Below, piece after piece: positions 1 to 26,354 of a stretch of DNA of 64,000 bases. Position 1 is the stretch's first letter. Every line of letters starts with the position of its first letter. The notes under the pieces are model-generated. The model was not told the DNA's origin, made no database searches, and saw nothing but the letters and a program-made list of their open reading frames with translations. The position numbers and the translations under genes were made by a program. The DNA is from Octopus sinensis (taxonomy: Eukaryota). The stretch covers positions 64,728,001-64,792,000 of the forward strand of contig NC_043006.1 of NCBI RefSeq assembly GCF_006345805.1, written 5' to 3'.

Positions 1-50
1 AGGAAAGATCAAGGGTAGACGGAGGAAAAGAAAATCGCCAACGGTACATA
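1..50 (-). mobile_element. Truncated copy of the Penelope-type/hammerhead repeat also seen at 7456-7655
   Basis: aggaaagatc..gacggaggaaaagaaaatcgccaacggtaca matches 7601-7655 (ggaaagatcc..gatggaggaaaaaaataaatcgccaacgataca); runs off the window edge. Confidence 0.6.
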
Positions 51-63
51 TATATACACGGCG

Positions 64-540
64 CAGGAGTGGTTGTGTGGTAAGTAGCTTGCTTACCAAC
101 CACATGGTTCCGGGTTCATTTCCACTGCATGGCACCTTGGACAAGTGTCTTCTACTATAGCCTTGTTTCAGTCATTTGACTGTGGCCATGCTGGAGCACC
201 GCCTTTGGTCGAGCAAATCAACCCCAGGACTTATTCTTTATAAGCCTATTACTTATTCTATCGGTCTCTTTTGCCGAACCGCTAAGTTACGGAGACGTAA
301 ACACACCAGCATCGGTTGTCAAGCGATGTTGGGGGGACAAACACAGACACAGAAACATACACACACACACACACATATATATGACAGGCTTCTTTCAGTT
401 TCCGTCTACCAAATCCACTAACAAGGCTTTGGTTGGCCCAAGGCTATAGTAGACGACACTTGCCCAAGGTGCCACGCAGTGGGACTGAACCCGGAACCAT
501 GTGGTTCATAAGCAAGCTACTTACCACACAGCCACTCCTA
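64..540. mobile_element. Inverted pair of family-A tRNA-derived SINEs (OR/CORE-type): + head 64-162 and near-complete - copy 163-540
   Basis: Head ggagtgg(c/t)tgtgtggtaagtagcttgcttaccaaccacatggttccgggttca at 64 and its reverse complement at about 440-540. Confidence 0.85.
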
Positions 541-879
541 CAACTAATGTTTTTCCCTTTACTATACAATAAAGAACAATTCTCTATACTTTGACTCATC
601 ATGTCACAGTTAAATTTGTTTGACACCAAGGCACATTACCAAGTCCATTATATAACTTATAAAAGTTATTTATATTTGTTATTCAATCTCTGATGATTTA
701 ATGATGTGGTATTTCATCATATAACAAATATTGTGGTTAATGAAATATGTGTAAGACATAATGAATAATGTAAAAATTTATCTCCATATTTGTTTTACAT
801 TTGTACTTGCCTATATCATGAGCAATAAACCACACACAAACGTGTGTAAGTGTATGTATGTGTGTATACATATGTATGT

Positions 880-1200
880 ATATCATCATCATTTAACATC
901 CATTACCCATGCTGGCATGGGTTGGATGGTTTGACTGGGCTGGCATGCTGGAAGGCTGCACCAGACTCCAGTCAGATTTGGCATGGTTTTCTACGGCTGG
1001 ATGCCTTTCCTAATGCCAACCACTCTGAGAATGTAATGGGTGCAATTTGCATGACATGGGGGTGCGTTTATATGCTAATTTGCATGACACAGGTAGCTGC
1101 CACAACTGCGATTTTGCTCAGCTTGATAGGTGGTGTTCTCAAGCATGACATAATGCCAAAGGTCTTGGTCATTGCCTCCATGATGCCCAACACTCGAAAG
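880..1200 (-). mobile_element. Family-C repeat (RTE-LINE-related 3' tail), CpG-decayed
   Basis: Reverse complement of ggaaggcatccagc..ccaacccatgccagcatgg..gttaaatgatgatg. Confidence 0.75.
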
Positions 1201-2329
1201 GAACTCAGCCATGAAGCATGGCTGTGATAAGAAGTTTGGTTCCTAACTACATGATTTTAGGTTCAGTCCCACTGCATGGCACTTTAGCTAAGTGCCAAAA
1301 CCATGTGAGTGGATTTGGTTGACGGAAACTGTGCATTAGCATGTTGTATATATACATGTGGAAGTGCATATTTGTGTGTGTGTGTGTGTGTGTGTATGTT
1401 ACTGTTTCCCTGACTTGACATCACATGATAGTTGTAATCGAGTGTCACCATCATGCAAATGGTGTCCTTTTCCAATCAGGTGATAACAGATCTGCCCATG
1501 AGGAAATTTTACCTTATTAGGAAGCAGGCAAGGGTTGGTGACAGGAAGGGCATCCAACTGGAAAATTTGCCTTATCACATTCTGTCTGACCATGCAAGCA
1601 TGGAAAAGTGGATGACAATGATATCCAGTGTATCCATTTTTCTAGGTCAGTAATGAGGGGTAATTCGAGAGAGGTTTGGCCGATATTTCTAACAAGTCAA
1701 CCAACCTCTTTAAAAACATTAGATGCTGTTTAACTCCTGGTTGAGCAGGTCTATGATTAAATGCATTCCAACAGTGACAATCCAGTTTCTTTTTGTGTGT
1801 ATTATGAGATATAAAAAAAAAGCAGGACACTGAATAATTTAAAGGTAGAATGAAATCTGAGGAAGATTTGGTTGCTGTATACAGTCGGTTGTAATGTCAC
1901 ATATGGAGGTTCTTTCATTGGTTTGTTTGTGTATTTCTGGTTGCAGTTTAGCCTTTGGTCAACCATAGCTGTCTTAGCAACATTATAGGTCCCCAAGCAA
2001 AGCAATGTTTTGGGCCTGTTTACATTAATTTTATATATATTTTTGACAACAAACCACAGTGTATACATCTTAATTGGACCCCTAGACCTACGAGATTCCC
2101 AAGCAACTGCCCAGTATGTCCAAGCTTTAGGACGGCACTGCAGTCAGCCCTGGTTGAGCAGACTTATCAAAGGCATTCCAGCCATGTTCATGCCACTATT
2201 TTGTGTGAGCTGTTTCATACAACATTAATCTGTACCTCCCTTTATAGCATAACTATAGATGTGTACCTGCACTCTGAATTTGTTTCTTAATAACATTCTG
2301 ACAAAGGTATATTTTTTCAATGGGACACA

Positions 2330-2800
2330 TTTTAGAAAATGTAAATAAGGAAATATTGGAGTTTGTTGTGAAATGTTTTTTTTTCTGGTGATGTGGATAA
2401 TTCACACACCTCGATTTGTTTCCACACAAATTTCTGAAAAATTAATATTTTTAGATTTAATTTTCAATAAATACGTTTCAGATGGTGTAGATTACGATTA
2501 GGTTGGGATCTGATGAGGAAAATAATAATAATAATAATAATAATTGGCTAGGGATCAGATAATTCATAAACTTTGGCTTTGTTTTAATCACATGATTTGA
2601 TGAGGTGTCCGAATAATCCGTCTCCACTCTCTTCAATTATTTCTCACATCCAATTCTGATATATATGTAATCTAAGCCATCTGAAAGATACTTGCTGAAA
2701 TTTTTATTAAAAAATATCAAGATTTTAGCAAGTAATGAGGAAACAAAGTCAGCGGGGCATACATCTCTAGTTATGCCCCACTTATTTTCATGATGGTGAT
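2330..2800. mobile_element. Degraded non-autonomous DNA-transposon-like repeat (related pieces at about 15280-15650, 16020-16085 and 21235-21360)
   Basis: Shared words (gaatttgttgtgaaa, gaggaaacaaagtc..ggggcac, ataactttccgaaaa) recur at four loci; superfamily not determinable. Confidence 0.45.
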
Positions 2801-4334
2801 GTGAGATGAGAGATATTTGGATGCTGTTTCTAGAAGATCGAGCGACTTATCGTATAGGCTGGTATATATGTTATAAGTTAAACTGTATTAAAAGGCATTC
2901 TACCCATGATAAATCCATTTTATTTTAAAAGCCAGTGTGATGTGGAATGAGATTTAGCTTCTGTTTCTAGCTGTTGTTGACCCTTTGCCTTTCCTGTGTA
3001 TTATCTGTGATATATGGGATAGACATATTTCCCTGGTGTCCATACATTATATATGATACACATTAGCAATTTCCCAATCACAAGAGTATTCTGGGACTTA
3101 TGAAATGGAAAATTTTATATTACTCAGAATGAATGAAACAAGGCTTAAAGAAGAAAACATGTCTAAAAACGTCTAGAACAAGCTTATGAAAATGCCTTGG
3201 ACAGGAAACATGTTTATACTTTGGTTTATTTAAATAGCATGAAATAATATTGAAATAGAATTAAAAGGAACACAAGAATAAATAATGGATTTAAATTTAG
3301 AACAAAATTAATAACAAAATGAATTGAATAAACAAGTCAAGAAATAAATGAATAACGGTTAAAGTTTGATAAACAATGGAAGATCAGGTTGAATAAATGA
3401 GTGTCACGAATTAGAACTGTTTAAGTAATTACAACAGCAGATGAGAAGAGTGAAATTGGGTAGAGTGTATGTGTGTGTGTGTGTGTGTATGGGGGGGGGA
3501 TAGTGCCAAGAAGTGGTTAGTGTAGTCTTGCCTCAAGTCAACACTGAATAGGCAGATACATGATCAAAGGCTTTCCAGTTATGACCATCTTGTCTATTTA
3601 CTAGACACAGTACACACACAATCATATTATCCAATATATATGTGTGCGTGCGTTATTTTTAAGGCAGGAGAGAACAGTTTTTTTTTCTTTTTGATGGCAT
3701 GTGGTTAGAAGCTCGCTTTACAATCATGTGGTGTCTGGTTCAGCCTGCTGTGCAGCAGCGTTTACTATAACGCTGGGACGACTGATGCCTTGTGAGTGAA
3801 TTTGGCAGACAGAAACTGTGTGGAAACCTGTTGTGAGTGTGTGTGTGTATGTGTATATATATTGTCAGCAAATCATATATCCTAAAAAGAAACACACTTT
3901 AAACATTAGGGCAGTAATGTATTTATAAGGAAGTTAATTATATGGTCAGTCATAGAGTGATTGGATGTGAAACCAGTGGTCACCATGACTGGCCATATAA
4001 CTTACTATATATATAAACACAAAAGATTGGAGATTTATCCATAATTTATTGGCTACGTACGTTTTAAATAGAATAGCATACCTCAAAAATGCTGCGATGC
4101 AACATTTATGCACAATTTAATTGATAAAAATGTTAGAGAAAGAGAGGAAAAGAGAAAGAGAGAGCAAAAGAAAGAGAGAGGACTTCAAACCCTTCCTATC
4201 TTATCAAAACTGCCATCATGCCTACATGTTTCTGCCTTATATTTTCAAGCAAGGGAATCTAGATTCAGCAACATTACAGCAACATTAGTCCTAAACCAGG
4301 ACTGCCATGTTATGTTGGCAAACAATCTTTTACT

Positions 4335-4843
4335 ACAAAGTACTGTTGCTGAATGTCCCACGTTGTGAGATTTAAAAATAGTAATTTACTTCATAACATT
4401 GCAGAACTTGCAATTGAAGATCTAGTCCTGGGAGATGAATTCTTGATACACAATACCACATTTGGCAAGTCTTCCAGATTGCTCATCGTCTTCCTGGGAC
4501 ATTCTTCCACTTTTGAAGTGCTTGTGCCACTCGAAATATTGTGTACGACCCATTGCTTCATCTTGTTGCCATAAGTTTGCCAAAGCATGCTCAATATCTC
4601 TGTAGCAGACTTCCCAAGTTTAATGCAAAATTTCATGTTGGCTCTTTGTTCCTGTTCATGACAAAACCGCAGACTACAGCATACACGTGATCACAAAAAT
4701 ATAAATTCCACAACATAGCAATGTCACTCTGCACACTACTGCCACGTGAAGTTCATTACTAGCTCTCATTGCGCACACAACCAAGTGTTGCCATCTGTTG
4801 GTGCACTACAGAACTAGTTCGGGAACTTTTTGATACCACCTTG
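4335..4843 (-). mobile_element. mariner transposon relic: 5' TIR plus frameshifted N-terminal HTH of the transposase
   Basis: Minus strand TA|caaggtggtatcaaaaagttcccgaactag; translates EQRANMKFCIKLGKSATEILSML then, after a frameshift, DEAMGRTQYFEWHKHFKSGRMSQEDDEQSGR. Confidence 0.9.
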
Positions 4844-5309
4844 TAGATAACACACACACACACACATACATACATACACATGTGCATGTGTGTAAGCCAA
4901 CATTAACGCTTGGCTTCCGGTGTTGGTTTATTTACGTCTCAATAACTTAGTGGTTTGGCAAAAGAGACAGACTTAAAAATTACTGGGCGCCGTCTAATGA
5001 CTGAAACAAGTAAAAGATGCTATGGTAGCCAAACGGAAACGTTAAAGCAACTGAGAGTGAAAGAGCAAAGAAATAATCGTTAATAATTAATGATAATACA
5101 ACTGTCAACAAACGATATTAAAGGCCCTGAATTTAAAATGCGGTTGATTTATTATTTCGATATGTTCTGTTTATTGTATTTATCAAACGGAAAATTTTCA
5201 TAATTGATACAAAATTATGCGATACAGGGTGGCAGTGCTTTCCTTTCATGGCCAAACTATGCAAGCCAGCTTTCCCCTAATCTCTAGGTACTGAAAATTC
5301 TTGTGTGCG

Positions 5310-5388
<79 letters not shown>

Positions 5389-5494
5389 GTTGACAGAGGT
5401 GGGGAAGCAAGAGAGACGGGGATTCTATTTTCTTTGAACGACTTTAAATGCAAATCCTGGTGGGATTTGAATGCTGAACGTATAAAGTGAACTA

Positions 5495-5875
5495 CAATAA
5501 TCCCTCGACTATCGCGGGTGTAACGTTCCAAATCTACACCCACCAACACCACCTGTGTCATCTCTTGTGAAAGGTAAGAGAGTCCAGTTTGCTGGACATT
5601 GTTGTAGAGCTGAAAAAGAGGTAATTTCTACTCTTCTCCTCTGGAAGCCATCAACTCGCAATACCAGAGGGCGCACACTCTCCTACCCTGATGTAATCTC
5701 CAGGGATACAGGCATCCAGCAACAGGACCTCCTTAATGCCATGATGGACCGTGAAGTCTGGCGTAGCATGGTAAATTCCATTGTCTCGACCACAGTCGAA
5801 CAATGATGAATGATGATGACCCATCTGCAATAGGTGAAAATCCGCAAAGTAGAAGTACTGTATATATTTAAAAAA
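5495..5875 (+). mobile_element. pogo/Tigger-like MITE left end, interrupted by a LINE fragment
   Basis: TA|caataatccctcgactatcgcggg at 5495; resumes after the LINE as gcaataggtgaaaatccgcaaagtag; no right TIR found. Confidence 0.55.
5530..5820 (+). mobile_element. 5'-truncated non-LTR retrotransposon 3' end (ORF2 C-terminus plus (TGA)n tail)
   Basis: ORF 5555-5806 RVQFAGHCCR..LLLWKP..RGRTLSYPDVISRDTG..AMMDREVWR matches the usual post-RT C-terminal motif; tail tgatgaatgatgatga. Confidence 0.85.
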
Positions 5876-6529
5876 AATAATTTTTATAATTTGTATATAT
5901 TTATTTTATTATAAATACATGACAACATCACGGAGGAATCGGTGTAAGCTTAAATAATAAACCATGATAGGTGAACTGTGATATGGCGAGGGATTACAAG
6001 TAAGTACTAAGTAAATACTAATTCATGGAGTGCAAAACAAAACAGCGCGAATCTAAACAATAACGTATTTATTCATTCTCAATGTTATGGCAGATTTTAA
6101 CGTGAATATATCAGAACACTTGTTTTTCGTAGTCGGCGCTCATTACCGTTTAGACAAAGTACGATCATTAGATGACACAAATGAGACATTTACAACGTTG
6201 CTCTGTAAGTATTTCCTACTGAACTATTTGTCTTTTTTTAAAGTCTGGTACATAATCAGTCGGTTTCTCTTCCCGAAATCGCTAAGTTGTCAAGCATCAA
6301 GCAGTGTGTGTACGGGAAGCGGAACAAACACAGACACATATGGGCCTCCATAGTTTCCGTCTATTAAATTCACACACAAGCAATTGATCGGCTTGGGGCT
6401 ATAATAGGAAACACACACACACACACAAACTTTCCCAAGATGTCACGGAGTGGGATCGAACCCAAAGCCAAGTGACTGCAAAGCGAGCTGCTTAACCACA
6501 TAACTATGCCGGTGCCAATGATAAACAAT

Positions 6530-7235
6530 AAATATTCTTTTCTACTCAAGACACAAGGCCCGAAATTTTGGGGAGGGCCCAGTCGATTAGATCGACCCCA
6601 GTACGTAATTGGTCTTTAATTTATCGATCCCGAAAGGATGAAAGGCAAAGTCGACCTCGGCGGAATTTGAACTCAGAACATAAAGACAGATGAAATACCG
6701 TTAAGTATTTTGCCCGGTGTGCTAACGATTCTGCCAGCTTGCTGCCTTAACAATAAATATTGAAAGGACGAACGACCTCGGCGTGTTATAACAAGTTTTA
6801 TGTTAGGATCAACTTCATCTCATATGAATCTCTGATCTCTTTTGATAAAATATTTTGATAAAATATATATGTGTTTGCGTGACTGTGTGTGTGCATGGTT
6901 AACATATGTGCGTGTGGTTTTCTCTACGTAAGTGTGAACAAGTACAAATAGATACAAGGCCTGAAAATCGTCGATGCAATCGACCCCAGGGAAAAAAAAT
7001 ACAGCAGACTGCTAAAATCCTTTCTACTATAGGCACAAGGTCTGAAATTTGGGATGAGGGGAACAGCCGATTACATCGACCCCAATGTTTCACTGGTACT
7101 TAATTTATCAACCCTGAAAGGATGAAAGGCAAAGTTGACTCCGGCAGCATTTGAACTCAGAAAGTAAAGACAGGCGAAATATCGCTTAAGCATTTTGCCT
7201 GGCATGCTAACGATTCTGCCAGCTCGCCACCTTAG
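6530..7235 (-). mobile_element. Two family-B tRNA-derived SINEs (Meta-domain-like core gcctttcatcctttcggggtcgataaa)
   Basis: Reverse-complement matches at about 6530-6750 and 6950-7235. Confidence 0.85.
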
Positions 7236-7423
7236 ACTCTGCTATAATGAATCCATAAACATATAAAACATTCAAGGGTATATTTTTCCCCCCTTTGAAG
7301 ATATTATGCTCAGGTCATATAAATTTAATATTTAGTGCGTATTCATTGAAACAGCTGTAAGGGATGATGATTAATTTGCTGTTAATAAGAAACAATTATT
7401 AACTTTCCATCTCCATTTTCTTG

Positions 7424-7455
<32 letters not shown>

Positions 7456-7458
<3 letters not shown>

Positions 7459-7655
7459 ATCCAAACATGTAAACACAAAGAGAAAACACAACAATGCGAG
7501 GACGTGGAACAAGTATAGTGTTATTGGACGCTCAGGAAAGGAAAGAAAGAAGGAGGACCTAACGTTTCGAGCGGAGCTCTTCGTCAGAAACATAGGAAAA
7601 GGAAAGATCCAAGGAAGGGAAGATGGAGGAAAAAAATAAATCGCCAACGATACAC
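7456..7655 (-). mobile_element. Penelope-type non-autonomous repeat carrying a hammerhead motif
   Basis: Pyrimidine-rich minus strand with central CTGACGAAGAGCTCCGCTCGAAACGTT; homologous to 19400-19570 and 1-50. Confidence 0.65.
7556..7592 (-). ncRNA. Minimal type-I hammerhead ribozyme motif
   Basis: CUGACGA (7587-7581), extra A, stem II GAGC/GCUC with UCC loop, GAAA (7568-7565), palindromic ACGU helix III, GUU site; stem I weak (mostly G-U). Confidence 0.65.
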
Positions 7656-7689
7656 ATGCAGTCTGGCAAAGACCCCCTTTGGTAACAAA

Positions 7690-8300
7690 TGACCAAGAGA
7701 TTGCACCTAGAAAGTTCCCCTTCGAGACACAAACCTGAGCAAGGTTGTTTATGGAAGACTATCAGTCGCCCACACATACCAGTCTCCTGTTTCCCTCCTC
7801 TATGCTACCAATGTTATACAAGGGAAAGGCAACTCATTTCTTCAGCTGGATGAACTGGAGCAACGTGAAATCAAGTGTCTTGCTCAAAAACAAAATACAC
7901 AGCCCTGTCTGGGAATCGAACTTACAACCTCACAATTGTAAGCTCAACGCCCTAACCAATGTGAGCTATGCGCCTTCACATTGTCTGTTACAACAATAAC
8001 GAGAGTTCCAGTTGACCCGATCAACAGAAAAACCTGTTCGTGAAATTAACGTGCAAGTGGCTGAGTACTCCAGACACTCATATACCCATAATGTAGTTTT
8101 CAGGGAGATGCAAAGTGATACAGAATGTGACAAAGCTGGTCTCTTTTGAATGAGACATTATTCACTTTTACCAGCTGAGTGGGTGGGAGCAACGTGAAAT
8201 AAAGTGTCTAGTTCAATACCATAACGCACTGCCAGGAATCGAACTCACAACCTTATGATCGTAAGCCGAATACCCTAACCACTAAGCCATGCGCCTTCAC
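7690..8300. mobile_element. Cluster of degraded tRNA-derived SINEs
   Basis: Reverse-complement B-boxes gggaatcgaactt (about 7911) and aggaatcgaactc (about 8234) with matching A-box remnants. Confidence 0.6.
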
Positions 8301-8679
8301 ACACACACACACTAAGGCTCCTATCCTTGCAGGATTTAGTTTCATACTACTACAATGAGGAATCCAATCTAAATCAATAGCTGACAATATTTATTCTGCT
8401 GCTGTTTTCTCACATTGTCTGATGATGAGTTCTGATTGAAACCTCAGCTGTTTCCTATTCTCATATCATCATCCAGTATTTTTCTTTATTCTACTTTTTT
8501 TTTTCCGCGATGCAGTGACTACCACCTCTGCATATACTTGCCGATACATAGACAATCAAGAGCCAACTTGGTCACTCGAAAAGTTAAAAATAGCAAAAAA
8601 ATGAAAGGCATCAGATTGTATCTAAAAACAGGAAGGTCACAACTGAAAGCCTTGAGTCTGCTCAATCAAGGCCGATATA

Positions 8680-8905
8680 TATTTCTTTATTGCCCACAAG
8701 GGGCTAAACGTAGAGGGGATAAACAAGGACAAACAAAGGGATTAAGTCGATTACATCGACCCCAGTGCAAAACTGGTACTTTATTTATCGACCCCGAAAG
8801 GATGAAAGGCAAAGTCGACCTCGGCGAATTTGAACTCAGAACGTATCGACAGACGAAATACCGCTAAGCATTTCGCCCGGTGCGCTAACGTATCTGCCAG
8901 CTTAT
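8680..8905 (-). mobile_element. Young family-B SINE with a perfect 15-bp target-site duplication
   Basis: TSD atcaaggccgatata at 8665-8679 and 8906-8920; CpGs largely intact. Confidence 0.92.
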
Positions 8906-10488
8906 ATCAAGGCCGATATAAGTAAACAACACTGATTCATCAACACGTGAAAGACCTGCTTCCGGTGGTTGTTACCGAGGGTCATAAATTATAATAGTGA
9001 GAGACAAAAGAAAGGAAGGTGTGTGCGTGTGTGAGTGAGAGAGAAAGAGAGAGAGAGAGAGAGAGATATGGCTACACAATGAAAATGTAAATTGCAAAGA
9101 AAAGGATTAGAAAATGTCCAGACAATGCAATGCTTGTTTATGCAGTGAAGAAGAACAGTTTAATGTTTCTAGTAGTGAGATGAACCTGGTTGCTGGTGTT
9201 GAACGATAAATCAATTGATTCCCAACTTATTTGTACAGCAAACATTTCATCTCTATTTATGAAAGTAGAACATCAATAGTTTCATTGGACTATGTTACAA
9301 CCAGCCGTCACGGGTGAGCGAGAATATGGCCTTCTCTTTATGTCTTAGATATCTATGTAGTCACCAGAAAACAAGACACCCTCTCGGCCTTCCTCCACTT
9401 GAATGTTATAGCTAGAGGGAGAACGGCTGTAAGAAGTTTTAGGCTAAGAAAACTGTAACCATGCATGACCAAGTTTAAGGATTGAACCAATGACAGCAAT
9501 CCATGGGTCGAATATCCCTAACCATTAAGCTATTGGTATGCCTCTAGATAAGTGCATCTCATGCCACCAACTTTGTTTCCACATAACTTTCTGAGACATG
9601 GGTAGTGGCAGTGTGGTTTGAAGCTTGCTTCCCAACCACATGGTTCCAGGTTCAGTCCCACTGAATGGGACCTTGGGCAAGTGTCTTCTACTATGCTCCC
9701 AGACCAATCAAAGTTAGTGGATTTGGTAGATAGAAACTGAAATAAGCTCGTCATGTGTATGTATGTGTGTATATATGTAAGTTTTAAAATAGAGAGATTT
9801 AATGGATGTAATTTTATTTATTAAATTATTTAACATTGCCTTCAATTGTTTCATTTTGTCAATTTATATCCATTGAATCTCTCCATTTTCAAACTTATTG
9901 ATATTTGATGTTTTATAATATATTAATTGAAGAAATATCTCTTCACAAAATAATATATTAAACCAGGGTATCTTGGATAAAACTACCCCTGTAAGAGATT
10001 TAAATATCCTCATAGTGAATATACATACACATATATATATATATATATATATATAAATGAATTTAGAGGGATATATTATCTGGGCAGACACCATATTACC
10101 TCTCAGTTAATGGCTAGCCACTTCGATCAGTACTTAACATCTGTGACTAGAATTTATTGCAAGTCAATCCCCAAATTCTTTCGATTTGTAATTCCACGTT
10201 TCACTATGTATATATGTATGTGTATGTATGTATGTATATATATATGTATATGCATATATGTGTATAAATATAGATGTTTATATATATATATGTATATGTG
10301 TGCATATATAAATATATATATATATATGTGTGTACATATATGTATATATAAACATATGTATGCATGTGTGTGTGTGTATATATATATATAGTCAGGCACA
10401 TGTATATATACACATGTATATATATATACACACGTATATATATATATATATATATACACGTATATATATATATACACATGTGTATATA

Positions 10489-10884
10489 GGTGCAAGAGTG
10501 GCTGTGTGGTAAACAGCTTGCTAACCAACTACATGGTTCCGGGTTCAGTCCCACTGCGTGGCATCTTGGGCAGGTGTCTTCTGCTATAGCCCCGGGCCGA
10601 CCAATGCTTTGTGAGCGGATTTGGTAGACGGAAACTGAAAGAAACCTGTCGTATATATGTATATATATATATGTGTGTGTGTATGTGTTTGTCCCCCTAG
10701 CATTGCTTGACAACCGATGCTGGTGTGTTTATGTCCCCGTCACTTAGCGGTTCGGCAAAAGAGACCGATAGAATAAGTACTGGGCTTACAAAGAATAAGT
10801 CCTGGGGTCGATTTGCTTGACTAAAGGCGGTGCTCCAGCATGGCCTCAGTCAAATGATTGAAACAAATAAAAGAGTAAAAGAGT
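10489..10884 (+). mobile_element. Full-length family-A SINE
   Basis: tRNA-like head, internal (TA/TG)n, tail ..aaaagagtaaaagag. Confidence 0.9.
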
Positions 10885-11366
10885 ATATACACACACATGT
10901 ATATATATATATATACACACACATGTATATATATATATATATACACGTTTATATATACGCACACACACACATATATATATACATACATGTACACAGATAT
11001 AACCACGTTTATGTATACATGTATATATGTATACATATATATATACACACGTATATATATATATATACACACACACGTATATATATATATATATATATAT
11101 TTCTTTACTACCCACAAGGGGCCAAACACAGAGGATATATATATATATATATGACAACCGATGCTGGTGTGTTTATGTCCCCGTCACTTAGCGGTTCGGC
11201 AAAAGAGACCGATAGAATAAGTACTGGGCTTACAAAGAATAAGTCCTGGGGTCGATTTGCTTGACTAAAGGCGGTGCTCCAGCATGGCCTCAGTCAAATG
11301 ATTGAAACAAATAAAAGAGTAAAAGAGTATATACACACACATGTATATATATATATATACACACAC

Positions 11367-11404
<38 letters not shown>

Positions 11405-11640
11405 TTTTATATACGCACACACACATAATATATACATACATGTACACAGATACACACACGTTTATGTATACATGTATATATATGTATACATATATGTACA
11501 CAGATATACACACACGTTTATGTATACATGTATATATATGTATACATATATATATATACACACGTATATATATATATATATATTTCTTTACTACCCACAA
11601 GGGGCCAAACACAGAGGGGATATATATATATATATATATA
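10708..11640. repeat. Tandem duplication of a ~444-bp unit (SINE 3' half + microsatellite + cut SINE-B tail)
   Basis: tgacaaccgatgctgg.. starts at 10708 and again at 11152; non-microsatellite parts appear identical. Confidence 0.9.
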
Positions 11641-11644
11641 CATA

Positions 11645-13150
11645 TATTTATTATTATTATTTATTAATTATTATTATTCTGATCCCCCTAGTCGCCACTC
11701 TGTTTACTATTTCAGCCTCGCCTCGTTTTTGCATATTCTGTATAATTCACTAGTTATCGTTATAGATATTTAAGATCTATCTCCCTTACAGGGCTGATTA
11801 GAAATTGGCTGCCGGTTCTTCCCGGGGTTTTCCCTCCCCCTCTTTTTACATTGTCTGTCTGGACTCCTCTTCCTACTCCTCGACATGGCTATGCATACTT
11901 AAGCTAGTAACCTGCCTCACTCTTGATTCCGAATTCCTTTTGCCAAGTCTGTCGGTAAACGAAGTGATCCCAAGATAAGAAATCTTTGAACTTTAATTCA
12001 TCCGTATCTCTATTTATTATTATTATTTATTAATTATTATTATTCTGATCCCCCTAGTCGCCACTCTGTTTACTATTTCAGCCTCGCCTCGTTTTTGCAT
12101 ATTCTGTATAATTCACTAGTTATCGTTATAGATATTTAAGATCTATCTCCCTTACAGGGCTGATTAGAAATTGGCTGCCGGTTCTTCGCGGCGCGCCCCC
12201 GCCCTGCCCACCCCCCCACCAATACCGGATATCTCTATTTTGCTCCAACTATACCGGATGTCGTTTCTCCCACCATTATAGGTGTCTACTCTTTGAACCC
12301 CTCTCTTCAATACGCTATTTCACCATGCATTACCCCTCTCTCGATATCCTACCTACTAGTTCTACTTGCCTAGAACCTGTCCTCTGAACCACCCCTCCCA
12401 CTGGTGCTCCCCTATATTTCTGCACCCCCACCACCATTATAGGTGTCTACTCTTTGAACCCCCCTCTTCAATACGCTATTTCAACCATGCATTACCCCTC
12501 TCTCGATATCCTACGTTCTACTTGCCTAGAACCTGTCCTCTGAACCACCCCACCCCTCCCGCTGGTGCTCCCCTATATTTCTGCACCCCCACCACCACCA
12601 TTATAGGTGTCTACTCTTTGAACCCCCCTCTTCAATACGCTATTTCACCATGCATTACCCCTCTCTCTCGATATCCTACGTTCTACTTGCCTAGAACCTG
12701 TCCTCTGAACCACCCCTCCACTGGTGCTGCTCCCTATATTTCTGCACCCCCACCACCATTATAGGTGTCTACTCTTTGAACCCCCCTCTTCAATACGCTA
12801 TTTCACCATGCATTACCCCTCTCTCGATATCCTACGTTCTACTTGCCTATTACCTGTCCTCTGAACCACCCCTCCCACTGGTGCTCCCCTATATTTCTGC
12901 ACCCCCCCATAAAAAAGCACCATCCGAACGTGGCCGATGCCAGACCCCTCTGGCACCTGTGCAGGTGGCACGTAAAAAACACCCACTACACTCGCGGAGT
13001 GGTTGGCGTTAGGAAGGGCATCCAGCTGTAGAAACACTGCCAGACTAGACTGGAGCCTGGGGCAGTCCCGAGCTCTCCAGACCCCGGTCGAAACCGTCCA
13101 ACCCGTGCTAGCGCGGAAAACGGACGTTAAACGATGATGATGATGATGAT
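11645..13150 (+). mobile_element. Composite element copy 1: ~370-bp unit x1.5, GC/G4 junction, ~160-bp VNTR x4, RTE-type tail (GAT)n
   Basis: 370-bp unit period 11681 to 12047; VNTR starts 12271, 12432, 12596, 12754; tail ..ggacgttaaacgatgatgatg; inverted homologue at 48241-49548. Confidence 0.85.
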
Positions 13151-13708
13151 ATATATATATATATACATACACGTATATATATACATGCACGTATATATAC
13201 ATATATATATATTACATACACGTATATATACATATATATATATACATACACGTATATATACACATACACGTATATACATATATATACACATACACGTATA
13301 TATATATATACACACATACACGTATATATATATATATACACATACACGTATATATATATATATATACACATACACGTATATATATATACACATACACGTA
13401 TATATATATATATATACACATACACGTATATATATATATACACATACACGTATATATATATATACACATACACGTATATATATATATATACATACACGTA
13501 TATATATATGAAAATGGCATAACCAGAGATGTGAGTGTTCGACTTTGCTGCTTTAACTTTTTAATGCATTTTTTTTCTTATGGCATGGATACGTGATAAG
13601 AAATTTGATTCCAGGTTTAGTTTCGCTGCGTGGCACCTCGAACAAGTGTCTTCTACGGTAACCTCGGGCTGACCAAATCCGTGTAAGAGGATTTGGTAGA
13701 TGAAAACT

Positions 13709-13746
<38 letters not shown>

Positions 13747-13757
13747 CTCTCTCCTCC

Positions 13758-13788
<31 letters not shown>

Positions 13789-14234
13789 ATATTATATATA
13801 TATATATATACGTGTATGTATATACGTGTATGTATATATTATATATATAATATATACGTGTATGTATATATATATATATATACGGTATGTATATATATAT
13901 ATATACACATACACGTAATATATATATATATATACATATACATACACGTATATATATATATACATATACATACACGTATATATATATAACATATACATAC
14001 ACGTATATATATATATACATATACATACACGTATATAATATATATTATATATACATACACGTATATATATATATATACATACACGTATATATATAATATA
14101 TACATACACGTATATATATATATACAACAACGTATATATATATATCATACATACACGTATATATATATATATACATACTACACGTATATATATATATATA
14201 CATACATACACGTATATATATATATATACATACA

Positions 14235-14269
<35 letters not shown>

Positions 14270-14808
14270 ATATATATATATATACATACACGTATATATA
14301 TATATATACATACACGTATATATATATATATACATACACGTATATATATATATATATACATACACGTATATATATATATATATACATACACGTATATATA
14401 TATAATACATACACGTATATATATATATATACATACACGTATATATATATATATACATACACGTATATATATATATATACATACACGTATATATATATAT
14501 ATACATACACGTATATATTATATATACATACACGTATATATATATTATACATACACGTATATATATATATATATACTCACGTATATATATATATATACAT
14601 ACACGTATATATATATACATACACGTATATATATATACATACACGTATTATATATATATACATACACGTATATATATATACATACACGTATATATATATA
14701 CATACACGTATAATATATAACATACACGTATATATATATACATACACGTATATATATATACATACACGTATATATATATACATACACGTATATATATATA
14801 CATACACG

Positions 14809-14841
<33 letters not shown>

Positions 14842-14844
14842 TAT

Positions 14845-14848
<4 letters not shown>
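13150..14848. repeat. (TATATA)nCATACACG compound microsatellite arrays, interrupted by 13508-13750
   Basis: Direct inspection; motif orientation flips near 13895. Confidence 0.95.
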
Positions 14849-14890
<42 letters not shown>

Positions 14891-15092
14891 GAGTTTTCAT
14901 CTACCAAATCCTCTTACACGGATTTGGTCAGCCCGAGGTTACCGTAGAAGACACTTGTTCGAGGTGCCACGCAGCGAAACTAAACCTGGAATCAAATTTC
15001 TTATCACGTATCCATGCCATAAGAAAAAAAATGCATTAAAAAGTTAAAGCAGCAAAGTCGAACACTCACATCTCTGGTTATGCCATTTTCAT
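13508..15092. repeat. Inverted duplication: 13508-~13895 is the reverse complement of the block ending at 15092
   Basis: atgaaaatggcataaccagag..gatgaaaactctctc (13508-13720) versus gagagttttcatc..ctctggttatgccattttcat (14880-15092), about 200 unique bp with no mismatch seen. Confidence 0.9.
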
Positions 15093-15654
15093 GATTGGGT
15101 TCCACTATTTTACCAAAGAAAGATAAGTTTAGTATCTGTTTCTTTGTATGTTCCTCTGCTTTTCAACATTTACCCCAGAACGAATCATTTCTCTTTATTT
15201 TTCCTTACTTCGCTTGCGTGCGATAAAAGTTTTTTTAATGGAATAACCACAATTGGTGTGTCCCACGCTGGACTTTGTTTGTTTCTAACTTTCTGGGAAA
15301 ATTCACATTTATTTAATGAAAACTTCCAGAAATACATTTTAGAGATGATGTTGATTAGAGTTATATCGGAATTTGTTGTGAAAAGTTTTCGTCGGAGAAG
15401 AGAGGAGTTTTGGAAAAATGAGGAGTTTCTGAAAAATGGACATTTTTTAATAAAGCTTCCCACAAATATTGTAGATAATGACTATGTCAGAATTTAATGG
15501 GGAAAAACATATTAAAAGCCGGGGAGTTGAATAATTCATAAGGCTCAATTTTGTTTCCTCGTACATTTTGACGCGGTGTGTCGCCTCCCCACTAAATATT
15601 TCCACATCAAATTTAGATATAATGGCAATATACACCATCCGAAACATCTTTTAT

Positions 15655-16015
15655 CTTTTATTTGTTTCAGTCATTGGATAGCGGCTGTGCTGGGGCACCA
15701 ACTCGAAGTGTTTTAATTGATCAAATCGACCCCGGTACATTTTCTTTGTTTTCACTTTGGTATTTATTCTATCGGTCACTTTAACCGAACGGTTAAGGGA
15801 TCGTAAACAAACCAAACCAAGTCTGGTTGTCAAACGACGCTGGAGACACACATACACATGACGGGTTTCCACACAGTTTCCGTCTATCAAATCCACTCAC
15901 AAGACATTGGTCGGCTCGGGGCTATTGTAGAAGACACTTGCCCAAAGTGTCGAGCAGTAGGATTGAACCCAAAAATATTTGGTTGCAAAGTGAACTGATT
16001 AACCACACCTTTTAA
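15655..16015 (-). mobile_element. Family-A SINE
   Basis: Reverse complement of head, body and tail. Confidence 0.8.
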
Positions 16016-16479
16016 AAATTCTATTAAAAAAATATCCATTTTTCGGAAAGTTATGAGGAAACAAAGTCGGTGGGGTCGGGGCACACATCAATAATTAGGC
16101 TATTTTAATGTGTGCATATGTATGTATGTATATAAGTTTAAAACCCTAAGAAAATAATACTGAAATAGAGAAAAATAAGATGTCGAGATAGCTTGATAAA
16201 TAAACTTAAAATTCTCATCGTCCTTAAATGGGCTGTGAGTTTAATACCGAAAAGTTTTGTACAACCCTCCTTCTGAAATACGGTCCATCACATGTCTGAG
16301 AAAGTGATTGACCTCCGGTCGAAAATCAATTGCACTCAAAGAAGTGAAATAAAATAAATAGATGTGACTCAACGGAGAATCGAATTTGCATCCTGGCAGA
16401 CTCAGTTTGCTAAGAATTCAATTCCACTTTCTATCGTACACGTACAAATTTTAAAAAAGTTCCAAATATTCCAAATAAT

Positions 16480-16690
16480 ACTCTTTCAAACACAAGGCCA
16501 GCAATTTTGAAGAGAGGGGGTGCAAACCGATTACACCGACTCCAGCACTTGACTAGTAGTTTATTTTATCGACCCGAAAGATGAAAAGGCAAAGTCGGCC
16601 TCAGCGGAATTTGAACTCAGAACATAACGAGCCGGAAGAAATACCGCAAAGCATTTCTTCCGACGCTGCAATATTCTACCAGCTCGTCGC
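16480..16690 (-). mobile_element. Family-B SINE
   Basis: ..gacccgaaagatgaaaaggcaaagtcggcctcagcggaatttgaactcag..agctcgtcgcc. Confidence 0.85.
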
Positions 16691-16855
16691 CGTTAGGTCA
16701 CAAATAACATTGATTTCTAGTATTCTATACTATTCTATACAAGGCCATCATACACAGTTTAGGGAGTTAAACTACAGTCGAATATAATCAGCGTTCTACC
16801 ATTTCTGCCACTCACCGTTCATACACAAAAGGCACATAATAAATAAAAGTCTTAC

Positions 16856-16862
16856 CTGCCAT
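16856..16862 (-). CDS. Start of CDS: ATG GCA G (Met-Ala-x, phase-1 intron); product unknown
   Basis: aattATGG has A at -3 and G at +4; first ATG after the predicted TSS; immediately followed by GTAAGA. Confidence 0.6.
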
Positions 16863-17031
16863 AATTAATTTTTTTTTTTTATCACTTGGTTCCTGTTTTT
16901 CTTGTTAACTTATATCACTTAATGTATTTAGCAATTCTATTAAAATCGGGAACACAAGACACACACACACTCAACGAAGCGAAGCTCAACGTCTTCCAAT
17001 GTTCGCTTACGACGCGACTCGGAAAAAAACT
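16856..17031 (-). other. Putative first exon (about 170-nt 5'UTR plus 7 coding nt) of an unidentified protein-coding gene
   Basis: Begins at Inr-like tcgAgtt about 27 nt below the TATA; no upstream ATG; ends at consensus donor CAG|GTAAGA (intron starts at 16855). Confidence 0.7.
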
Positions 17032-17171
17032 CGATTGTGGAATGATTCACCTTTTATAGTCGGTACTTCGAAAAAGATCGCAATTTGTGTGCTGTGACGT
17101 CACAATGTGATTGGATTGGCATGATAAACAAGCCAACGACACATTACATCCTAATCTATTGTTGTCACGTG
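17028..17171 (-). promoter_or_regulatory. TATA promoter with full CRE, tandem CCAAT boxes and E-box
   Basis: TATAAAAG 17058-17051; TGACGTCA 17095-17102 inside the 12-bp palindrome tgtgacgtcaca; CCAATCCAAT 17119-17110; CACGTG 17166-17171; all in canonical order and orientation. Confidence 0.78.
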
Positions 17172-19009
17172 GTTTCGTCTTATTTCTTTTCTGCTTTTTG
17201 TTTGTTAATTGTATAATTAATGATCTTCCTAACCCAACCCCAACAATATGCGTAGCAGACAATAAAACACTGTGTTCGTAGATAGAGTGGCACAGCATAT
17301 TTACTATCATGCACAATGGAAGATATACACGTATGTTTACTATCATGCACAATAAAAGATACACACGTATATATTCATACATAAATTCATACCTACAACT
17401 TGTGTGCAGCTAAGTTAGTAGGTTAAAAGTGTCCACTGAAAAACCTGTTAACGGGAATAAAAACACACACACACACACTCACACACATATACATACATTA
17501 GAGCAGTCGTCACAATCTGTCAGTTGACATTACTTTTCAGCCTGCAGAAAAGAAAAGAAACAAAAAAAGTTATCGATGAAATAAAACAAACAAAAATGGA
17601 TCGTTGTTTGCAGGACATACTTAAGATATGGTTTCACTAGTTGGTCGCTAAAACAAAGACAAACTGTTGAAACAAACGGATATCACCAGACATGATAAAA
17701 CCACTCCTTTACTTATTAAACTTATCCAACGACACGTCCAATCGAAGTCCATCTAAGGCAAAGAGGAATCTGGAGAAACCGGTTCATACTTATTACTTCA
17801 TTGTATTTGTAAATAATCATAAGCAAACAACTTGATAACACTGTTGTACATAGAAACAGGACAACCAGGAGGGGAATATATTTATCGTCAGCGCTGTCTG
17901 CTATCGTCTGCTTTGCTTTACTTCACAAACGCCGTGCTGCATATGGTTCCGCCAACGCCATAGCATTTGTGATATTTCTCCTTCATCCCCCACCCTTCGT
18001 GAAATGAAACTTGTAAGGATCTAAAGTAAATAGTAGGAAGTAGAGTTCCGGCTAAGATACTTATAAACGTAGTGGTTCTCGAACTGACAAATAACCACTC
18101 GCCAAAAAAACAATAGTGAAAATTTTCACTCTCCAACTTTATTAATGAGAAAATATCAAGAAAGACAGTTTACATCAATATAATTCTTCCTTCACCATGG
18201 TGTTGAACAAATTTAAATAGTTAATTTTATTAAACATGGCAATTTGTTAGCTTCCTTTTAACAATCTTCACAGAGCCAAGCCCCCAGGGAGTTCTGCCAC
18301 CCCTATCTTTCAATGAAAAACATAGCTATAAAGAATTCAGCATTACTGAAGTTGGATCCACCAAATATTTTGATTGGCATTCGTAATTAAACTGAGCAAA
18401 GCTTGGCTTTTAACTACCCATTAATAATAGGTCTTGACATCAGTTCTAGAAGATTTTTATTTTTCTGGTTGCAGTAATGATAAAACAAGCGCAACACTGT
18501 CACAGATATACTACAACATTGTTTTACCAGTAACAACAGTTGTAGACGATTTCTAGACTCATACAACACCATCAATCAGATTGGTTTTTAAGCACTCGGC
18601 AGTCAAATTACTGCCTACATTTCATTAATCCAGTTATACGTACATCAACAAACCGTGTACAATCGTTGTGTAATTGTACAAAAAGAAACAAACTAGACAT
18701 TGGTACTCGTTGCACACATTAAAATTCACATTTAATCAAATTTACGAGGCATTATGCCTTTCTTAAAGGGTTTCAACAATTATTGGCATCGTTGCAGTGG
18801 ACAGGCTTCTTTTCAGATGTTCTTTCTTCATTGTATTTCATAATTTGTCATGTGGTTTCAGGCTTGGACAAGTGTTTTCTAATATAGCCTCCAGGACGAC
18901 CACTGTCTTGTGAGAGAATTTGGTAAATGAAAACTGAGTGGAAGCATATTTGAAATAATTCTTTTTTTTTTGGAAATGGATCTCGAAACACATATATGCT
19001 ATAAATGAT

Positions 19010-19230: not shown

Positions 19231-19300
19231 GCTATAAATAAATAAATAGCGTGCAAATAATTTTGGGTTGAAAGACCCTTTTGGATAGAAAACGTCGACG

Positions 19301-19370
19301 ACTGTCCGTAGGACTCGAACCCATATCTCCTGTAGACATGACAGACGTTCTACCATCGAACCAAAGTAAT
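19301..19370 (-). pseudogene. tRNA-like sequence (pseudo-tRNA or isolated SINE head)
   Basis: D-arm GTTC/GAAC, anticodon arm TCTGT/ACAGG with 7-nt loop, B-box GGTTCGAGTCC; acceptor stem and anticodon loop non-canonical. Confidence 0.55.
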
Positions 19371-19399: not shown

Positions 19400-19570
19400 C
19401 TTTATTCTTAGCAGCGAATATGACGTCAACAATATTCTCTCCATCTGTTTTCTCTCCTCATTCCTTTCTGCAGAAGAGCTTAGGCTCGAAACGTCAAAGA
19501 CTTCTTTTATTTTTCCCGAGCGGCAGACTAATACACACAGTTATTCATTCACCTGTCACTGTTTTTTTTT
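19400..19570 (+). mobile_element. Penelope-type repeat with hammerhead motif (second copy)
   Basis: Homologous to 7456-7655 around ctg.agaagagct..gctcgaaacgt..cttc..tttcc.gagcg. Confidence 0.6.
19464..19499 (+). ncRNA. Minimal hammerhead motif with one core mutation (CUGC for CUGA)
   Basis: Stem I CUUU/AAAG, CUGCAGA, A, stem II GAGC/GCUC with UUAG loop, GAAA, CGUC (GUC site after 19495). Confidence 0.6.
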
Positions 19571-25710: not shown

Positions 25711-25937
25711 TCAAGTCATCTGGAGTCAACAATACCAACCGACTTCAATTTGACCCTTAGGTGTGTTAATTATAATTCAATCTGTTGTAAGCTTTTGGAG
25801 CAAACATCCCTACATCCTCTATTCAAGTCATCTGGAGTCAACAATACCAACCGACTTCAATTTGACCCTTAGGTGTGTTAATTAGAATTCAATCTGTTGT
25901 AAGCTTTTGGAGCAAACATCCCTACATCCTCTATTCA
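25711..25937. repeat. 112-bp tandem duplication
   Basis: tcaagtcatctggagtcaac starts at 25711 and 25823; one mismatch seen (ttataattc / ttagaattc). Confidence 0.92.
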
Positions 25938-26354
25938 ATCGCTATGTTCCCCGTAGATAAGCTGGGCAATTGCGCGTGTAAATCTCAGGCTTGTAGGAGA
26001 GGGACCTCCAAAATCTCATGGACGTTGCTCCTACACCTACCTTCCATTGTTTTCTTTATCAGGAATCTCATTTGTATATGCCTATTTAAGTACTATTTAC
26101 TTTTTTCTGGAACGCCGACCGCCAGTACTACCACACAATCAAAACGTACCCGGATATCTTCACACAAAAGATGAGTCAGCTCTACAGGGCATTAATGAGT
26201 ATTAAAGAACAAAAGAATTGTCGAACAATGCTTGGATAAATAAAGAAATCAGTTTCGAGCTATTGCAGTGTTGATTTAGCTCTATCATTTAGTCACATGC
26301 GCGCGCGTGTGTGAGTAGTAGTAGTAGTAGTAGCAGCAGCAGCAGCAGCCAGCC

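What the first reader, a model, noticed from the sequence alone, without database searches (positions are those of the whole stretch)
16851..17171. Immediate-early-style promoter and micro-coding first exon of an unidentified gene
Seen on the minus strand, in order: E-box, CCAAT x2, perfect CRE, TATAAAAG, Inr-like, ATG-free UTR, strong-context ATG GCA G, consensus donor. Established: a full CRE close to a TATA box marks cAMP/Ca2+-inducible CREB targets, central to molluscan long-term memory. Inference: an activity-regulated gene (or alternative promoter) with a first intron likely over 16 kb; the ORF track misses it entirely. The gene cannot be named from 7 coding nt.
Basis: partly seen in the sequence, partly recalled or inferred. 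Interest (0 to 1): 0.7.

Follow-up and report, generated by a model that had tools for sequence, protein, structure and literature searches.

The report
Likely CRE/TATA promoter with tiny first exon
A single-copy stretch of this repeat-rich animal genome has the sequence anatomy of an ordinary RNA polymerase II promoter (E-box, two CCAAT boxes, a perfect cAMP-response element, a TATA box), followed by an ATG-free leader and a first exon that codes only "Met-Ala-G"; it is probably real, but the gene it serves and its inducibility could not be determined here.

Summary
The "Inr-like" element is the one item I could not support.

The cluster is more than chance. The ordered CCAAT-CRE-TATA pattern occurs in 0 of 100 dinucleotide shuffles. 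With two CCAATs it occurs in 0 of 400 Markov simulations. The 257 nt before the ATG are ATG-free (top 2% of gaps). The donor is in the top 0.3% of GT sites. The segment is single-copy in the window, and CpG o/e is 1.3-1.6 against 0.65 overall.

The most likely reading is a real TATA-type Pol II promoter and first exon.

"Immediate-early/CREB-inducible" is a reasonable inference from vertebrate CRE/TATA architecture, but it is untested. No SRE or AP-1 site accompanies the CRE.

No orthologous sequence could be obtained. One look-alike module in an unrelated invertebrate contig is intriguing, but it is not conserved in that contig's sister contigs.

This is an ordinary kind of feature of low to moderate interest.

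The parts
17166..17171 (-). Palindromic E-box CACGTG, about -143 from the predicted start
   Evidence: Read directly. It is the only CACGTG within -600..+250. There are 8 per strand in the whole window.
17110..17119 (-). Two abutting CCAAT boxes (CCAATCCAAT), about -91 and -86
   Evidence: It is the only CCAATCCAAT in the window. The position falls in the -60 to -100 range typical of NF-Y sites (established knowledge).
17093..17104 (-). Full cAMP-response element TGACGTCA (17102-17095) within the 12-nt palindrome TGTGACGTCACA, about -74 to -67
   Evidence: There are only two full CREs in 64 kb, against 0.66 expected.
17051..17058 (-). TATA box TATAAAAG
   Evidence: It is the only TATAWAW within -600..+250, and it lies 36 nt downstream of the CRE.
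17025..17031 (-). Predicted transcription start zone (inferred as 28-33 nt from the first T of the TATA). No canonical initiator is present.
   Evidence: Inference from TATA spacing. The motif scan finds no YYANWYY or TCAGTY here. A T7 run lies at 17029-17023.
16863..17024 (-). Putative 5' untranslated leader (~165 nt). It is ATG-free and contains a (GT)n run at ~16973-16958 and an A12 tract at 16880-16869.
   Evidence: The ATG-free stretch is 257 nt (top 2.1% of inter-ATG gaps). An in-frame stop lies at 16907. CpG o/e is 1.3-1.56.
16856..16862 (-). Putative start codon and 7 coding nucleotides, ATG GCA G (Met-Ala plus the first base of a codon for Gly, Asp, Glu, Ala or Val)
   Evidence: The Kozak context is A at -3 and G at +4. 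If unspliced, the frame gives only MAGKTFIYYVPFVYER*.
16850..16858 (-). 5' splice donor CAG|GTAAGA. The exon ends at 16856 and the intron begins at 16855.
   Evidence: It matches the consensus at 8/9 positions. Only 21 of 7,572 GT sites in the window score that high.
1..16855 (-). Putative first intron, at least up to the window edge, filled with repeats. A SINE copy lies at 16528-16715.
   Evidence: No recognisable coding exon was found. Stop-free segments give only a weak Mos1 HTH hit in Pfam. tblastn with several candidate proteins was negative. SINE copies are listed.
19421..19428 (.). Second perfect CRE, about 2.4 kb upstream. It may be a distal element of the same gene.
   Evidence: It lies in single-copy DNA. 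Its link to this promoter is conjecture.

Best explanation
This is a genuine TATA-containing RNA polymerase II promoter on the minus strand, together with the first exon of a spliced gene.

Proposed mechanism (inferred throughout):
- TBP/TFIID binds TATAAAAG (17058-17051) and sets the start near 17030-17025.
- NF-Y-type factors bind the double CCAAT at about -90.
- A CREB/ATF-family bZIP dimer binds the perfect CRE at about -70.
- A bHLH-ZIP factor (USF, Myc or TFE type) binds CACGTG at about -143.
- The transcript carries a leader of about 165 nt with no ATG. Translation starts at the ATG at 16862, which has a good context.
- After 7 coding nucleotides the transcript is spliced from CAG|GTAAGA to a second exon that lies beyond the window, more than 16.8 kb away.

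A full CRE this close upstream of a TATA box makes the promoter a candidate for cAMP/Ca2+-CREB/CRTC-dependent induction.

Shown: the motifs, their order and spacing, their statistical rarity, the ATG depletion, the donor quality, single-copy status and local CpG enrichment.

Inferred: factor binding, the start site, use of the ATG, the splicing, the intron length, inducibility and the identity of the gene.
For: - Motifs and coordinates were read directly.
- The ordered CCAAT-CRE-TATA pattern occurs in 0/100 dinucleotide shuffles. CRE+TATA+2xCCAAT occurs in 0/400 simulated windows.
- ATGs occur about every 36 nt upstream of -94 and resume at +166, +191, +206 and +226. None lies between. The 257-nt gap is in the top 2.1%.
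- The first ATG has A at -3 and G at +4. It is followed at once by a donor in the top 0.3% of GT sites. Only 0.4% of ATGs have such a donor within 30 nt.
- These features are independent in random sequence. Multiplied together, they give an expected chance frequency far below one per 64-kb window, and roughly one or fewer per genome of a few gigabases.
- The segment 16716-17300 is single-copy in a window otherwise full of SINE and other transposable-element (TE) copies.
- CpG o/e is 1.3-1.56 over 16801-17300, against 0.65 for the whole window.
- No Rfam family or tRNA explains the site.
- No LTR-like direct repeats or terminal inverted repeats (TIRs) bracket it.
- A second full CRE lies 2.4 kb upstream.
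- CRE/TATA promoters are the class preferentially induced by activity (PMC5740062).
Against: - There is no transcript, cap, chromatin or splice-junction evidence.
- No orthologous sequence could be retrieved, so conservation is untested.
- No exon 2 was identified, so the ATG and donor cannot be checked against a protein.
- No canonical initiator lies at the predicted start. A T7 run, a (GT)n run and an A12 tract give the leader a low-complexity look.
- The motifs were chosen after the fact by a reader looking for promoter grammar, which inflates the apparent significance.
- No SRE or AP-1 site supports an immediate-early character.
- The only external look-alike (L001) lies in DNA that is not conserved even between 91%-identical sister contigs.
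Confidence: 0.68

Rival explanations
1. Chance cluster: short A/T-rich and common factor motifs, an ATG and a GTAAG happen to line up in non-functional intergenic or intronic DNA, and nothing is transcribed from here.
For: - Each motif is short, and TATA-like strings are very frequent in this AT-rich window (about 800 TATAWAWR per strand).
- There is no initiator at the predicted start.
- The leader is low-complexity.
- No partner exon was found.
Against: - The ordered pattern occurs in 0/100 shuffles and 0/400 simulations.
- Independent features coincide: the ATG-free 257 nt (2%), a top 0.3% donor directly after the first ATG (0.4%), local CpG enrichment and single-copy status.
- The joint chance probability is several orders of magnitude below the prior density of real start sites.
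Confidence: 0.14
2. A real promoter, but not a protein-coding first exon as read. The transcript would be a long non-coding RNA or an alternative non-coding leader exon. The ATG would be incidental, an upstream ORF start, or the start of an unspliced 16-codon micro-ORF (MAGKTFIYYVPFVYER).
For: - Only 7 nt of coding sequence are claimed, and no downstream exon confirms the frame.
- The unspliced frame closes after 16 codons.
- The surrounding 64 kb has no host exon at all. That fits either a gene desert with non-coding transcription or a very long first intron.
Against: - Strong ATG depletion ends exactly at an ATG in good Kozak context. That is the pattern expected of a true start codon.
- First exons that carry only the start codon or a few codons are well known (established knowledge: vertebrate calmodulin, alpha-tubulin and cofilin genes).
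Confidence: 0.12
3. The motif block was brought in by a mobile or retroposed element, such as a solo LTR or a poly(A)-ended retrocopy bounded by ATTAATTAT at 17221-17213 and 16871-16863. It may or may not have been co-opted as a promoter.
For: - The segment ends in an A12 tract and is flanked by a 9-bp direct repeat.
- The only look-alike module elsewhere (L001) lies in a segment that is absent from 91%-identical sister contigs, as an insertion would be.
- That look-alike shares near-identical CRE flanks (TGTGACGTCACAGCA.AC) with the window, although the rest cannot be aligned.
Against: - The 9-mer repeat is at chance level. Three of 15 poly-A tracts in the window show one, and about 12% of AT-only 9-mers recur nearby.
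- There is no other copy in 64 kb, while true repeat families have more than 20 copies.
- No LTR or TIR structure was found.
- No polyadenylation signal precedes the A12 tract.
- No TE protein remnants were found in L001's segment.
Confidence: 0.06

Closest known systems
CRE/TATA class of CREB target promoters (for example vertebrate c-fos, Nr4a1/2, Dusp1, somatostatin, ICER P2), as defined in the CREB Target Gene database and used in PMC5740062
   Same: A full palindromic CRE lies within about 100 bp of the start, with a consensus TATA box close downstream (a 36-nt gap here). This is the arrangement linked to CRTC/CREB-dependent induction by cAMP or activity.
   Different: There is only one proximal CRE. 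No SRE/CArG or AP-1 companion sites were found. Binding, induction and conservation are untested. The gene is unknown. The rule itself was established in mammals, not in this organism.
NF-Y/ATF/TATA promoters of non-inducible or cell-cycle/stress genes (for example fibronectin CRE+CCAAT, replacement-histone and chaperone promoters)
   Same: The combination of CCAAT boxes at -60 to -100 with an ATF/CRE site and a TATA box is the same.
   Different: Those promoters are largely constitutive or respond to the cell cycle or stress. Sequence alone cannot tell which behaviour applies here. This comparison rests on recalled knowledge, not on a test.
Genes whose first exon carries only the initiator or a few codons (vertebrate calmodulin, alpha-tubulin, cofilin, VAMP)
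   Same: A leader exon ends within the first few codons and is followed by a long first intron.
   Different: Here the intron is in phase 1 inside codon 3 (ATG GCA G|), not directly after the ATG. tblastn with calmodulin, H3.3, eIF5A, cofilin and a CREM/ICER-like sequence found no exons in the window.
Look-alike module in metagenome contig Ga0056114_1020813 (L001, invertebrate host DNA)
   Same: CCAATCCAAT, then 6-7 nt, then TGTGACGTCACAGCA.AC, then about 30-36 nt, then CTATAAAAG, followed by a long ATG-free stretch. The search pattern has 0 matches in 596 Gb of prokaryotic genomes and 0 in IMG/VR.
   Different: Everything outside the motif blocks cannot be aligned. The downstream content differs: a RING/TRIM-like ORF lies 1.4 kb away, and there is no ATG-plus-donor. 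The module lies in a segment not shared with 91%-identical sister contigs. It is therefore neither an orthologue nor a demonstrably conserved promoter.

Membership tests
TATA-containing RNA polymerase II core promoter | Consensus TATA box (TATAWAWR) | tested here: met
   TATAAAAG at 17058-17051. It is the only TATAWAW within -600..+250.
TATA-containing RNA polymerase II core promoter | Initiator or start site about 28-33 nt downstream of the TATA | tested here: inconclusive
   No YYANWYY or TCAGTY at 17031-17025. The nearest Inr-like heptamer is 15 nt from the TATA. An Inr is not obligatory for TATA promoters.
TATA-containing RNA polymerase II core promoter | Capped transcripts initiating at the site | not testable with these tools
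   No transcriptome or CAGE data are reachable by DNA search. Protein-based look-ups found nothing.
CRE/TATA CREB-target promoter class | Full CRE TGACGTCA within the proximal promoter (-500..+300) | tested here: met
   17102-17095, about -74.
CRE/TATA CREB-target promoter class | [quoted passage not shown] | tested here: met
   The gap is 36 nt. The definition is taken from PMC5740062.
CRE/TATA CREB-target promoter class | CRE conserved between species | not testable with these tools
   No orthologous locus was retrievable. L001 is not an orthologue.
CRE/TATA CREB-target promoter class | CREB/CRTC occupancy and induction by cAMP/Ca2+ | not testable with these tools
   This needs an experiment.
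Immediate-early gene | Rapid induction that does not depend on protein synthesis | not testable with these tools
   This needs an experiment. SRE/CArG and AP-1 sites, which are common but not defining, are absent from -600..+250.
Protein-coding first exon with a micro coding segment | Start codon in favourable context after an ATG-free leader | tested here: met
   A at -3 and G at +4. 257 nt are ATG-free, and an in-frame stop lies at 16907.
Protein-coding first exon with a micro coding segment | Consensus 5' splice site at the exon end | tested here: met
   CAG|GTAAGA matches 8/9 positions, in the top 0.3% of GT sites.
Protein-coding first exon with a micro coding segment | A downstream exon that continues the reading frame | tested here: inconclusive
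   None was recognisable in 1-16855 on the minus strand. It may lie beyond the window or be too short to detect.
Retroposed element, SINE or solo LTR | Multiple dispersed copies | tested here: not met
   16716-17300 has no other copy in the window, while the SINE family has more than 20. Genome-wide copy number is untestable here.
Retroposed element, SINE or solo LTR | Target-site duplication with a poly(A) tail, or LTR/TIR ends | tested here: inconclusive
   A12 plus the ATTAATTAT repeat are present but at chance level. No LTR or TIR was found.
Small-RNA gene promoter (snRNA or Pol III type 3: E-box/PSE/TATA) | A known small RNA gene directly downstream of the TATA | tested here: not met
   No Rfam hit at gathering score in the window, and none meaningful at E<=5 over 16300-17400. 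A T7 run at the predicted start would terminate Pol III.

The most novel reading that the evidence does not exclude
The CCAATCCAAT / TGTGACGTCACAGCA / TATAAAAG block may be a discrete promoter cassette shared between distant invertebrate lineages. It could be deeply conserved, or it could be carried by an unrecognised mobile element, so that a ready-made CREB/NF-Y-responsive TATA promoter can be placed next to unrelated genes. This would explain why an unrelated invertebrate contig carries the same block with near-identical CRE flanks in lineage-specific DNA.
Probability: 0.06. Interest if true: 0.55.

Novelty: new member of a known kind. Interest (0 to 1): 0.25.

Why it matters
If confirmed, this would add one well-defined CRE/TATA promoter, with a very short coding first exon that ORF-based tracks cannot see, to the annotation of a repeat-rich invertebrate genome. 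It would also give a compact (~150 bp) candidate element for testing CREB-dependent transcription outside the vertebrates. On its own it changes no concept: the architecture is textbook. Its practical value lies in annotation (finding the true 5' end of a gene with a first intron longer than 16 kb) and as a possible reporter element.

Tried and rejected
- **Naming the gene by guess.** tblastn of calmodulin, H3.3, eIF5A, cofilin and a CREM/ICER-like sequence against the window found nothing.
- **Unbiased exon hunt.** All stop-free minus-strand segments of at least 28 aa from 1-16855 went to Pfam. The only hit was a sub-threshold Mos1 HTH. The rest of the window, on both strands, shows only TE debris.
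- **Fetching the same or orthologous locus through a spurious ORF that overlaps the promoter (17047-17382).** It is not on record and has no homologues.
- **Small-RNA gene.** No Rfam hit at gathering score or at a permissive E-value, and no tRNA.
- **Dispersed repeat or LTR/TIR element.** BLAST of the region against the window and the repeat finder were both negative for the promoter block.
- **Retrocopy with target-site duplication.** The signal is at chance level.
- **Look-alike L001.**
  - Its RING ORF has no counterpart in the window and only three relatives in the protein database.
  - Its module is not shared by sister contigs.
  - It has no TE domains.
- **Relaxed patterns in the prokaryotic and viral collections.** 0 hits.
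- **Naming the organism through the LINE tail.** Only unnamed ENA contigs were returned. The sample accessions were not found in the literature.
- **Mis-specified search.** One pattern search had the wrong gap length and is uninformative.

Full report
**1. What is in the sequence**

On the minus strand the window reads, in order:
- CACGTG, 17171-17166.
- CCAATCCAAT, 17119-17110.
- TGACGTCA, 17102-17095, inside the 12-nt palindrome TGTGACGTCACA.
- TATAAAAG, 17058-17051.
- About 190 nt with no ATG.
- ATG at 16862-16860, with A at -3 and G at +4.
- GCA G, then GTAAGA.

The putative exon therefore ends at 16856 and the intron begins at 16855.

The exception is the "Inr-like" element. Nothing resembling YYANWYY or TCAGTY lies 28-33 nt downstream of the TATA. 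The only nearby match is 15 nt from it.

If the donor is not used, the frame closes after 16 codons, giving MAGKTFIYYVPFVYER*.

**2. Is it more than chance?**

- The window holds only two full CREs, against 0.66 expected.
- The ordered pattern CCAAT-(0-30)-TGACGTCA-(20-50)-TATAWAW occurs once in the window and in none of 100 dinucleotide-preserving shuffles.
- In 400 Markov-1 simulations of 64 kb, a CRE followed by a TATA within 90 nt appeared in 31, with at least one CCAAT in 5, and with two in none.
- The nearest upstream ATG in any frame is 257 nt away, a gap in the top 2.1% on this strand. ATGs occur about every 36 nt upstream of -94 and again straight after +166.
- The donor CAG|GTAAGA matches the consensus at 8 of 9 positions. 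Only 21 of 7,572 GT sites in the window do as well.
- Only 9 of 2,413 ATGs are followed within 30 nt, in an open frame, by such a donor.

Multiplying these roughly independent probabilities gives a chance expectation far below one per window, and about one or fewer per genome of a few gigabases. Allowing a generous penalty for after-the-fact motif choice, a real promoter is still several times more likely than coincidence.

**3. Context**

- The window is eukaryotic, AT-rich (38% GC) and packed with microsatellites and transposable-element (TE) remnants.
- It has no long ORFs, no Rfam family at gathering score and no tRNA.
- A SINE family with more than 20 copies has one member at 16528-16715, just inside the putative intron.
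- The block 16716-17300 itself has no other copy in the window.
- CpG o/e rises to 1.3-1.56 over 16801-17300, against 0.65 overall. This fits an unmethylated promoter, but young repeats elsewhere in the window reach similar values.
- No LTR-like direct repeats or terminal inverted repeats (TIRs) bracket the block.
- A second perfect CRE lies at 19421-19428 in single-copy DNA, 2.4 kb upstream in the sense of the putative gene.

**4. The rest of the gene**

- I translated all minus-strand stop-free segments from 1 to 16855. By eye they contain only SINE translations, microsatellite translations and a decayed mariner transposase.
- Pfam agrees. Its single hit is a sub-threshold Mos1 HTH.
- Candidate proteins with very short first coding exons or CRE promoters (calmodulin, H3.3, eIF5A, cofilin, a CREM/ICER-like sequence) have no exons in the window.
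- The other 47 kb, on both strands, also shows only TE debris.

If this is a first exon, exon 2 lies beyond the window edge or is too short to recognise. The gene cannot be named from Met-Ala plus one G. The third residue would be Gly, Asp, Glu, Ala or Val.

**5. Attempts at external evidence**

None of the tools searches eukaryotic genomes by DNA, so I tried indirect routes.

- A spurious 111-aa ORF overlaps the promoter. It is not on record and has no homologues.
- A gapped pattern of the motif block found exactly one match in JGI metagenome contigs: L001, contig Ga0056114_1020813.
- The same pattern has no match in 596 Gb of prokaryotic genomes or in IMG/VR. A relaxed version also found none.
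- L001 is invertebrate host DNA. Its GC is 43% and its CpG o/e about 1. A RING/TRIM-like ORF lies 1.4 kb downstream, and its nearest named relative is a Mytilus TRIM56.
- L001 cannot be aligned with the window outside the motifs. However, 9 of the 10 bases flanking the CRE are identical (TGTGACGTCACAGCA.AC). Part of that may reflect the flank preferences of CREB/ATF sites.
- Sister contigs are 91% identical to L001, but only from position 2978 onward. The module at 2431-2491 therefore lies in lineage-specific DNA.
- That segment has no TE domains or terminal repeats.

I conclude that L001 is an intriguing look-alike. It is evidence neither for orthology nor for conservation. It keeps a small probability alive for a portable promoter cassette.

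**6. The mobile-element rival in the window**

The block ends in an A12 tract and is flanked by ATTAATTAT at 17221-17213 and 16871-16863. That resembles a retrocopy with a target-site duplication. Against this reading:
- Three of 15 poly-A tracts in the window show a comparable 9-mer repeat.
- About 12% of AT-only 9-mers recur within 600 nt.
- No polyadenylation signal precedes the tract.

This rival has weak support.

**7. Mechanism and comparison with known systems**

The best-supported reading is a TATA-type Pol II promoter with NF-Y-type CCAAT boxes at about -90, a CREB/ATF site at about -70 and a bHLH-ZIP E-box at about -143. It would drive a transcript whose first exon carries a leader of about 165 nt and 7 coding nt.

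By the working definition used for mammalian CREB targets, the site qualifies as a CRE/TATA promoter: a full CRE in the proximal promoter with a TATA less than 300 bp downstream. That is the class preferentially induced by neuronal activity through CRTC1 (PMC5740062).

This makes cAMP/Ca2+ inducibility a fair hypothesis and no more than that. CRE plus CCAAT plus TATA also occurs in constitutive and stress or cell-cycle promoters (recalled knowledge). No SRE or AP-1 site is present. The rule has not been tested in this organism, and no tool here named that organism.

**8. Verdict**

- Observation: confirmed.
- Interpretation: partly supported.
- Probability of a real promoter with a first exon: about 0.68.
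- Given that, probability that it is an activity/cAMP-inducible gene: roughly one in three.
- Kind: a new member of a well-known class.
- Interest: low to moderate. The main practical value is in gene annotation.

Noticed in passing
window 19421-19428: A second perfect palindromic CRE (TGACGTCA) in single-copy DNA, 2.4 kb upstream (minus sense) of the putative start. The window has two full CREs, against 0.66 expected.
   Followed up: partly
window ~19290-19370 (minus strand): A tRNA-like sequence with a GGGTTCGAGTCC T-arm, probably the head of a tRNA-derived SINE. ARAGORN does not call it as a tRNA.
   Followed up: partly
window 16528-16715 and more than 20 other sites (clusters at 29.5-32 kb and 55.5-56.8 kb): A dispersed SINE-like family, 75-83% identical between copies. 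The clusters are among the most CpG-rich parts of the window.
   Followed up: partly
window 12270-12906: A tandem array of four copies of a 161-bp unit (92% matches).
   Followed up: no
window 13150-14850: About 1.7 kb of TA/CA microsatellite and 24-26-bp minisatellite sequence. It creates long spurious ORFs on both strands.
   Followed up: no
window 17297-17368: A 36-bp unit repeated twice (89% identity), about 240 nt upstream of the TATA. A telomere-like TTGGGGTTGGGTTAGG lies at ~17244-17229.
   Followed up: no
window 4394-4690 (-), 41493-41723 (+), 50755-50934 (+), 58160-58387 (+): Decayed mariner/Mos1-type transposase fragments. The first has a weak Pfam HTH_48 hit. The others were recognised by eye from DDE-region motifs.
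   Followed up: partly
window 5501-5803 (+): An open 101-aa C-terminal tail of a LINE ORF2-like protein. Its relatives (61-87% identity) occur only in short unnamed ENA metagenome contigs. One of them (L007) is 89% identical at the DNA level.
   Followed up: partly
window 25711-25938: A 112-bp unit duplicated in tandem at 99% identity, which suggests a recent duplication.
   Followed up: no
L001 2431-2491 (contig Ga0056114_1020813): Invertebrate host DNA in a metagenome carries a look-alike module: CCAATCCAAT, TGTGACGTCACAGCA, TATAAAAG, followed by about 320 ATG-free nt. It lies in a ~3-kb segment that is absent from 91%-identical sister contigs (L002, L003, L005).
   Followed up: yes
L001 3863-4441: A 192-aa ORF with an N-terminal RING finger, a duplicated coiled-coil segment and a C-terminal hydrophobic stretch. 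It has only three relatives in the protein database.
   Followed up: partly
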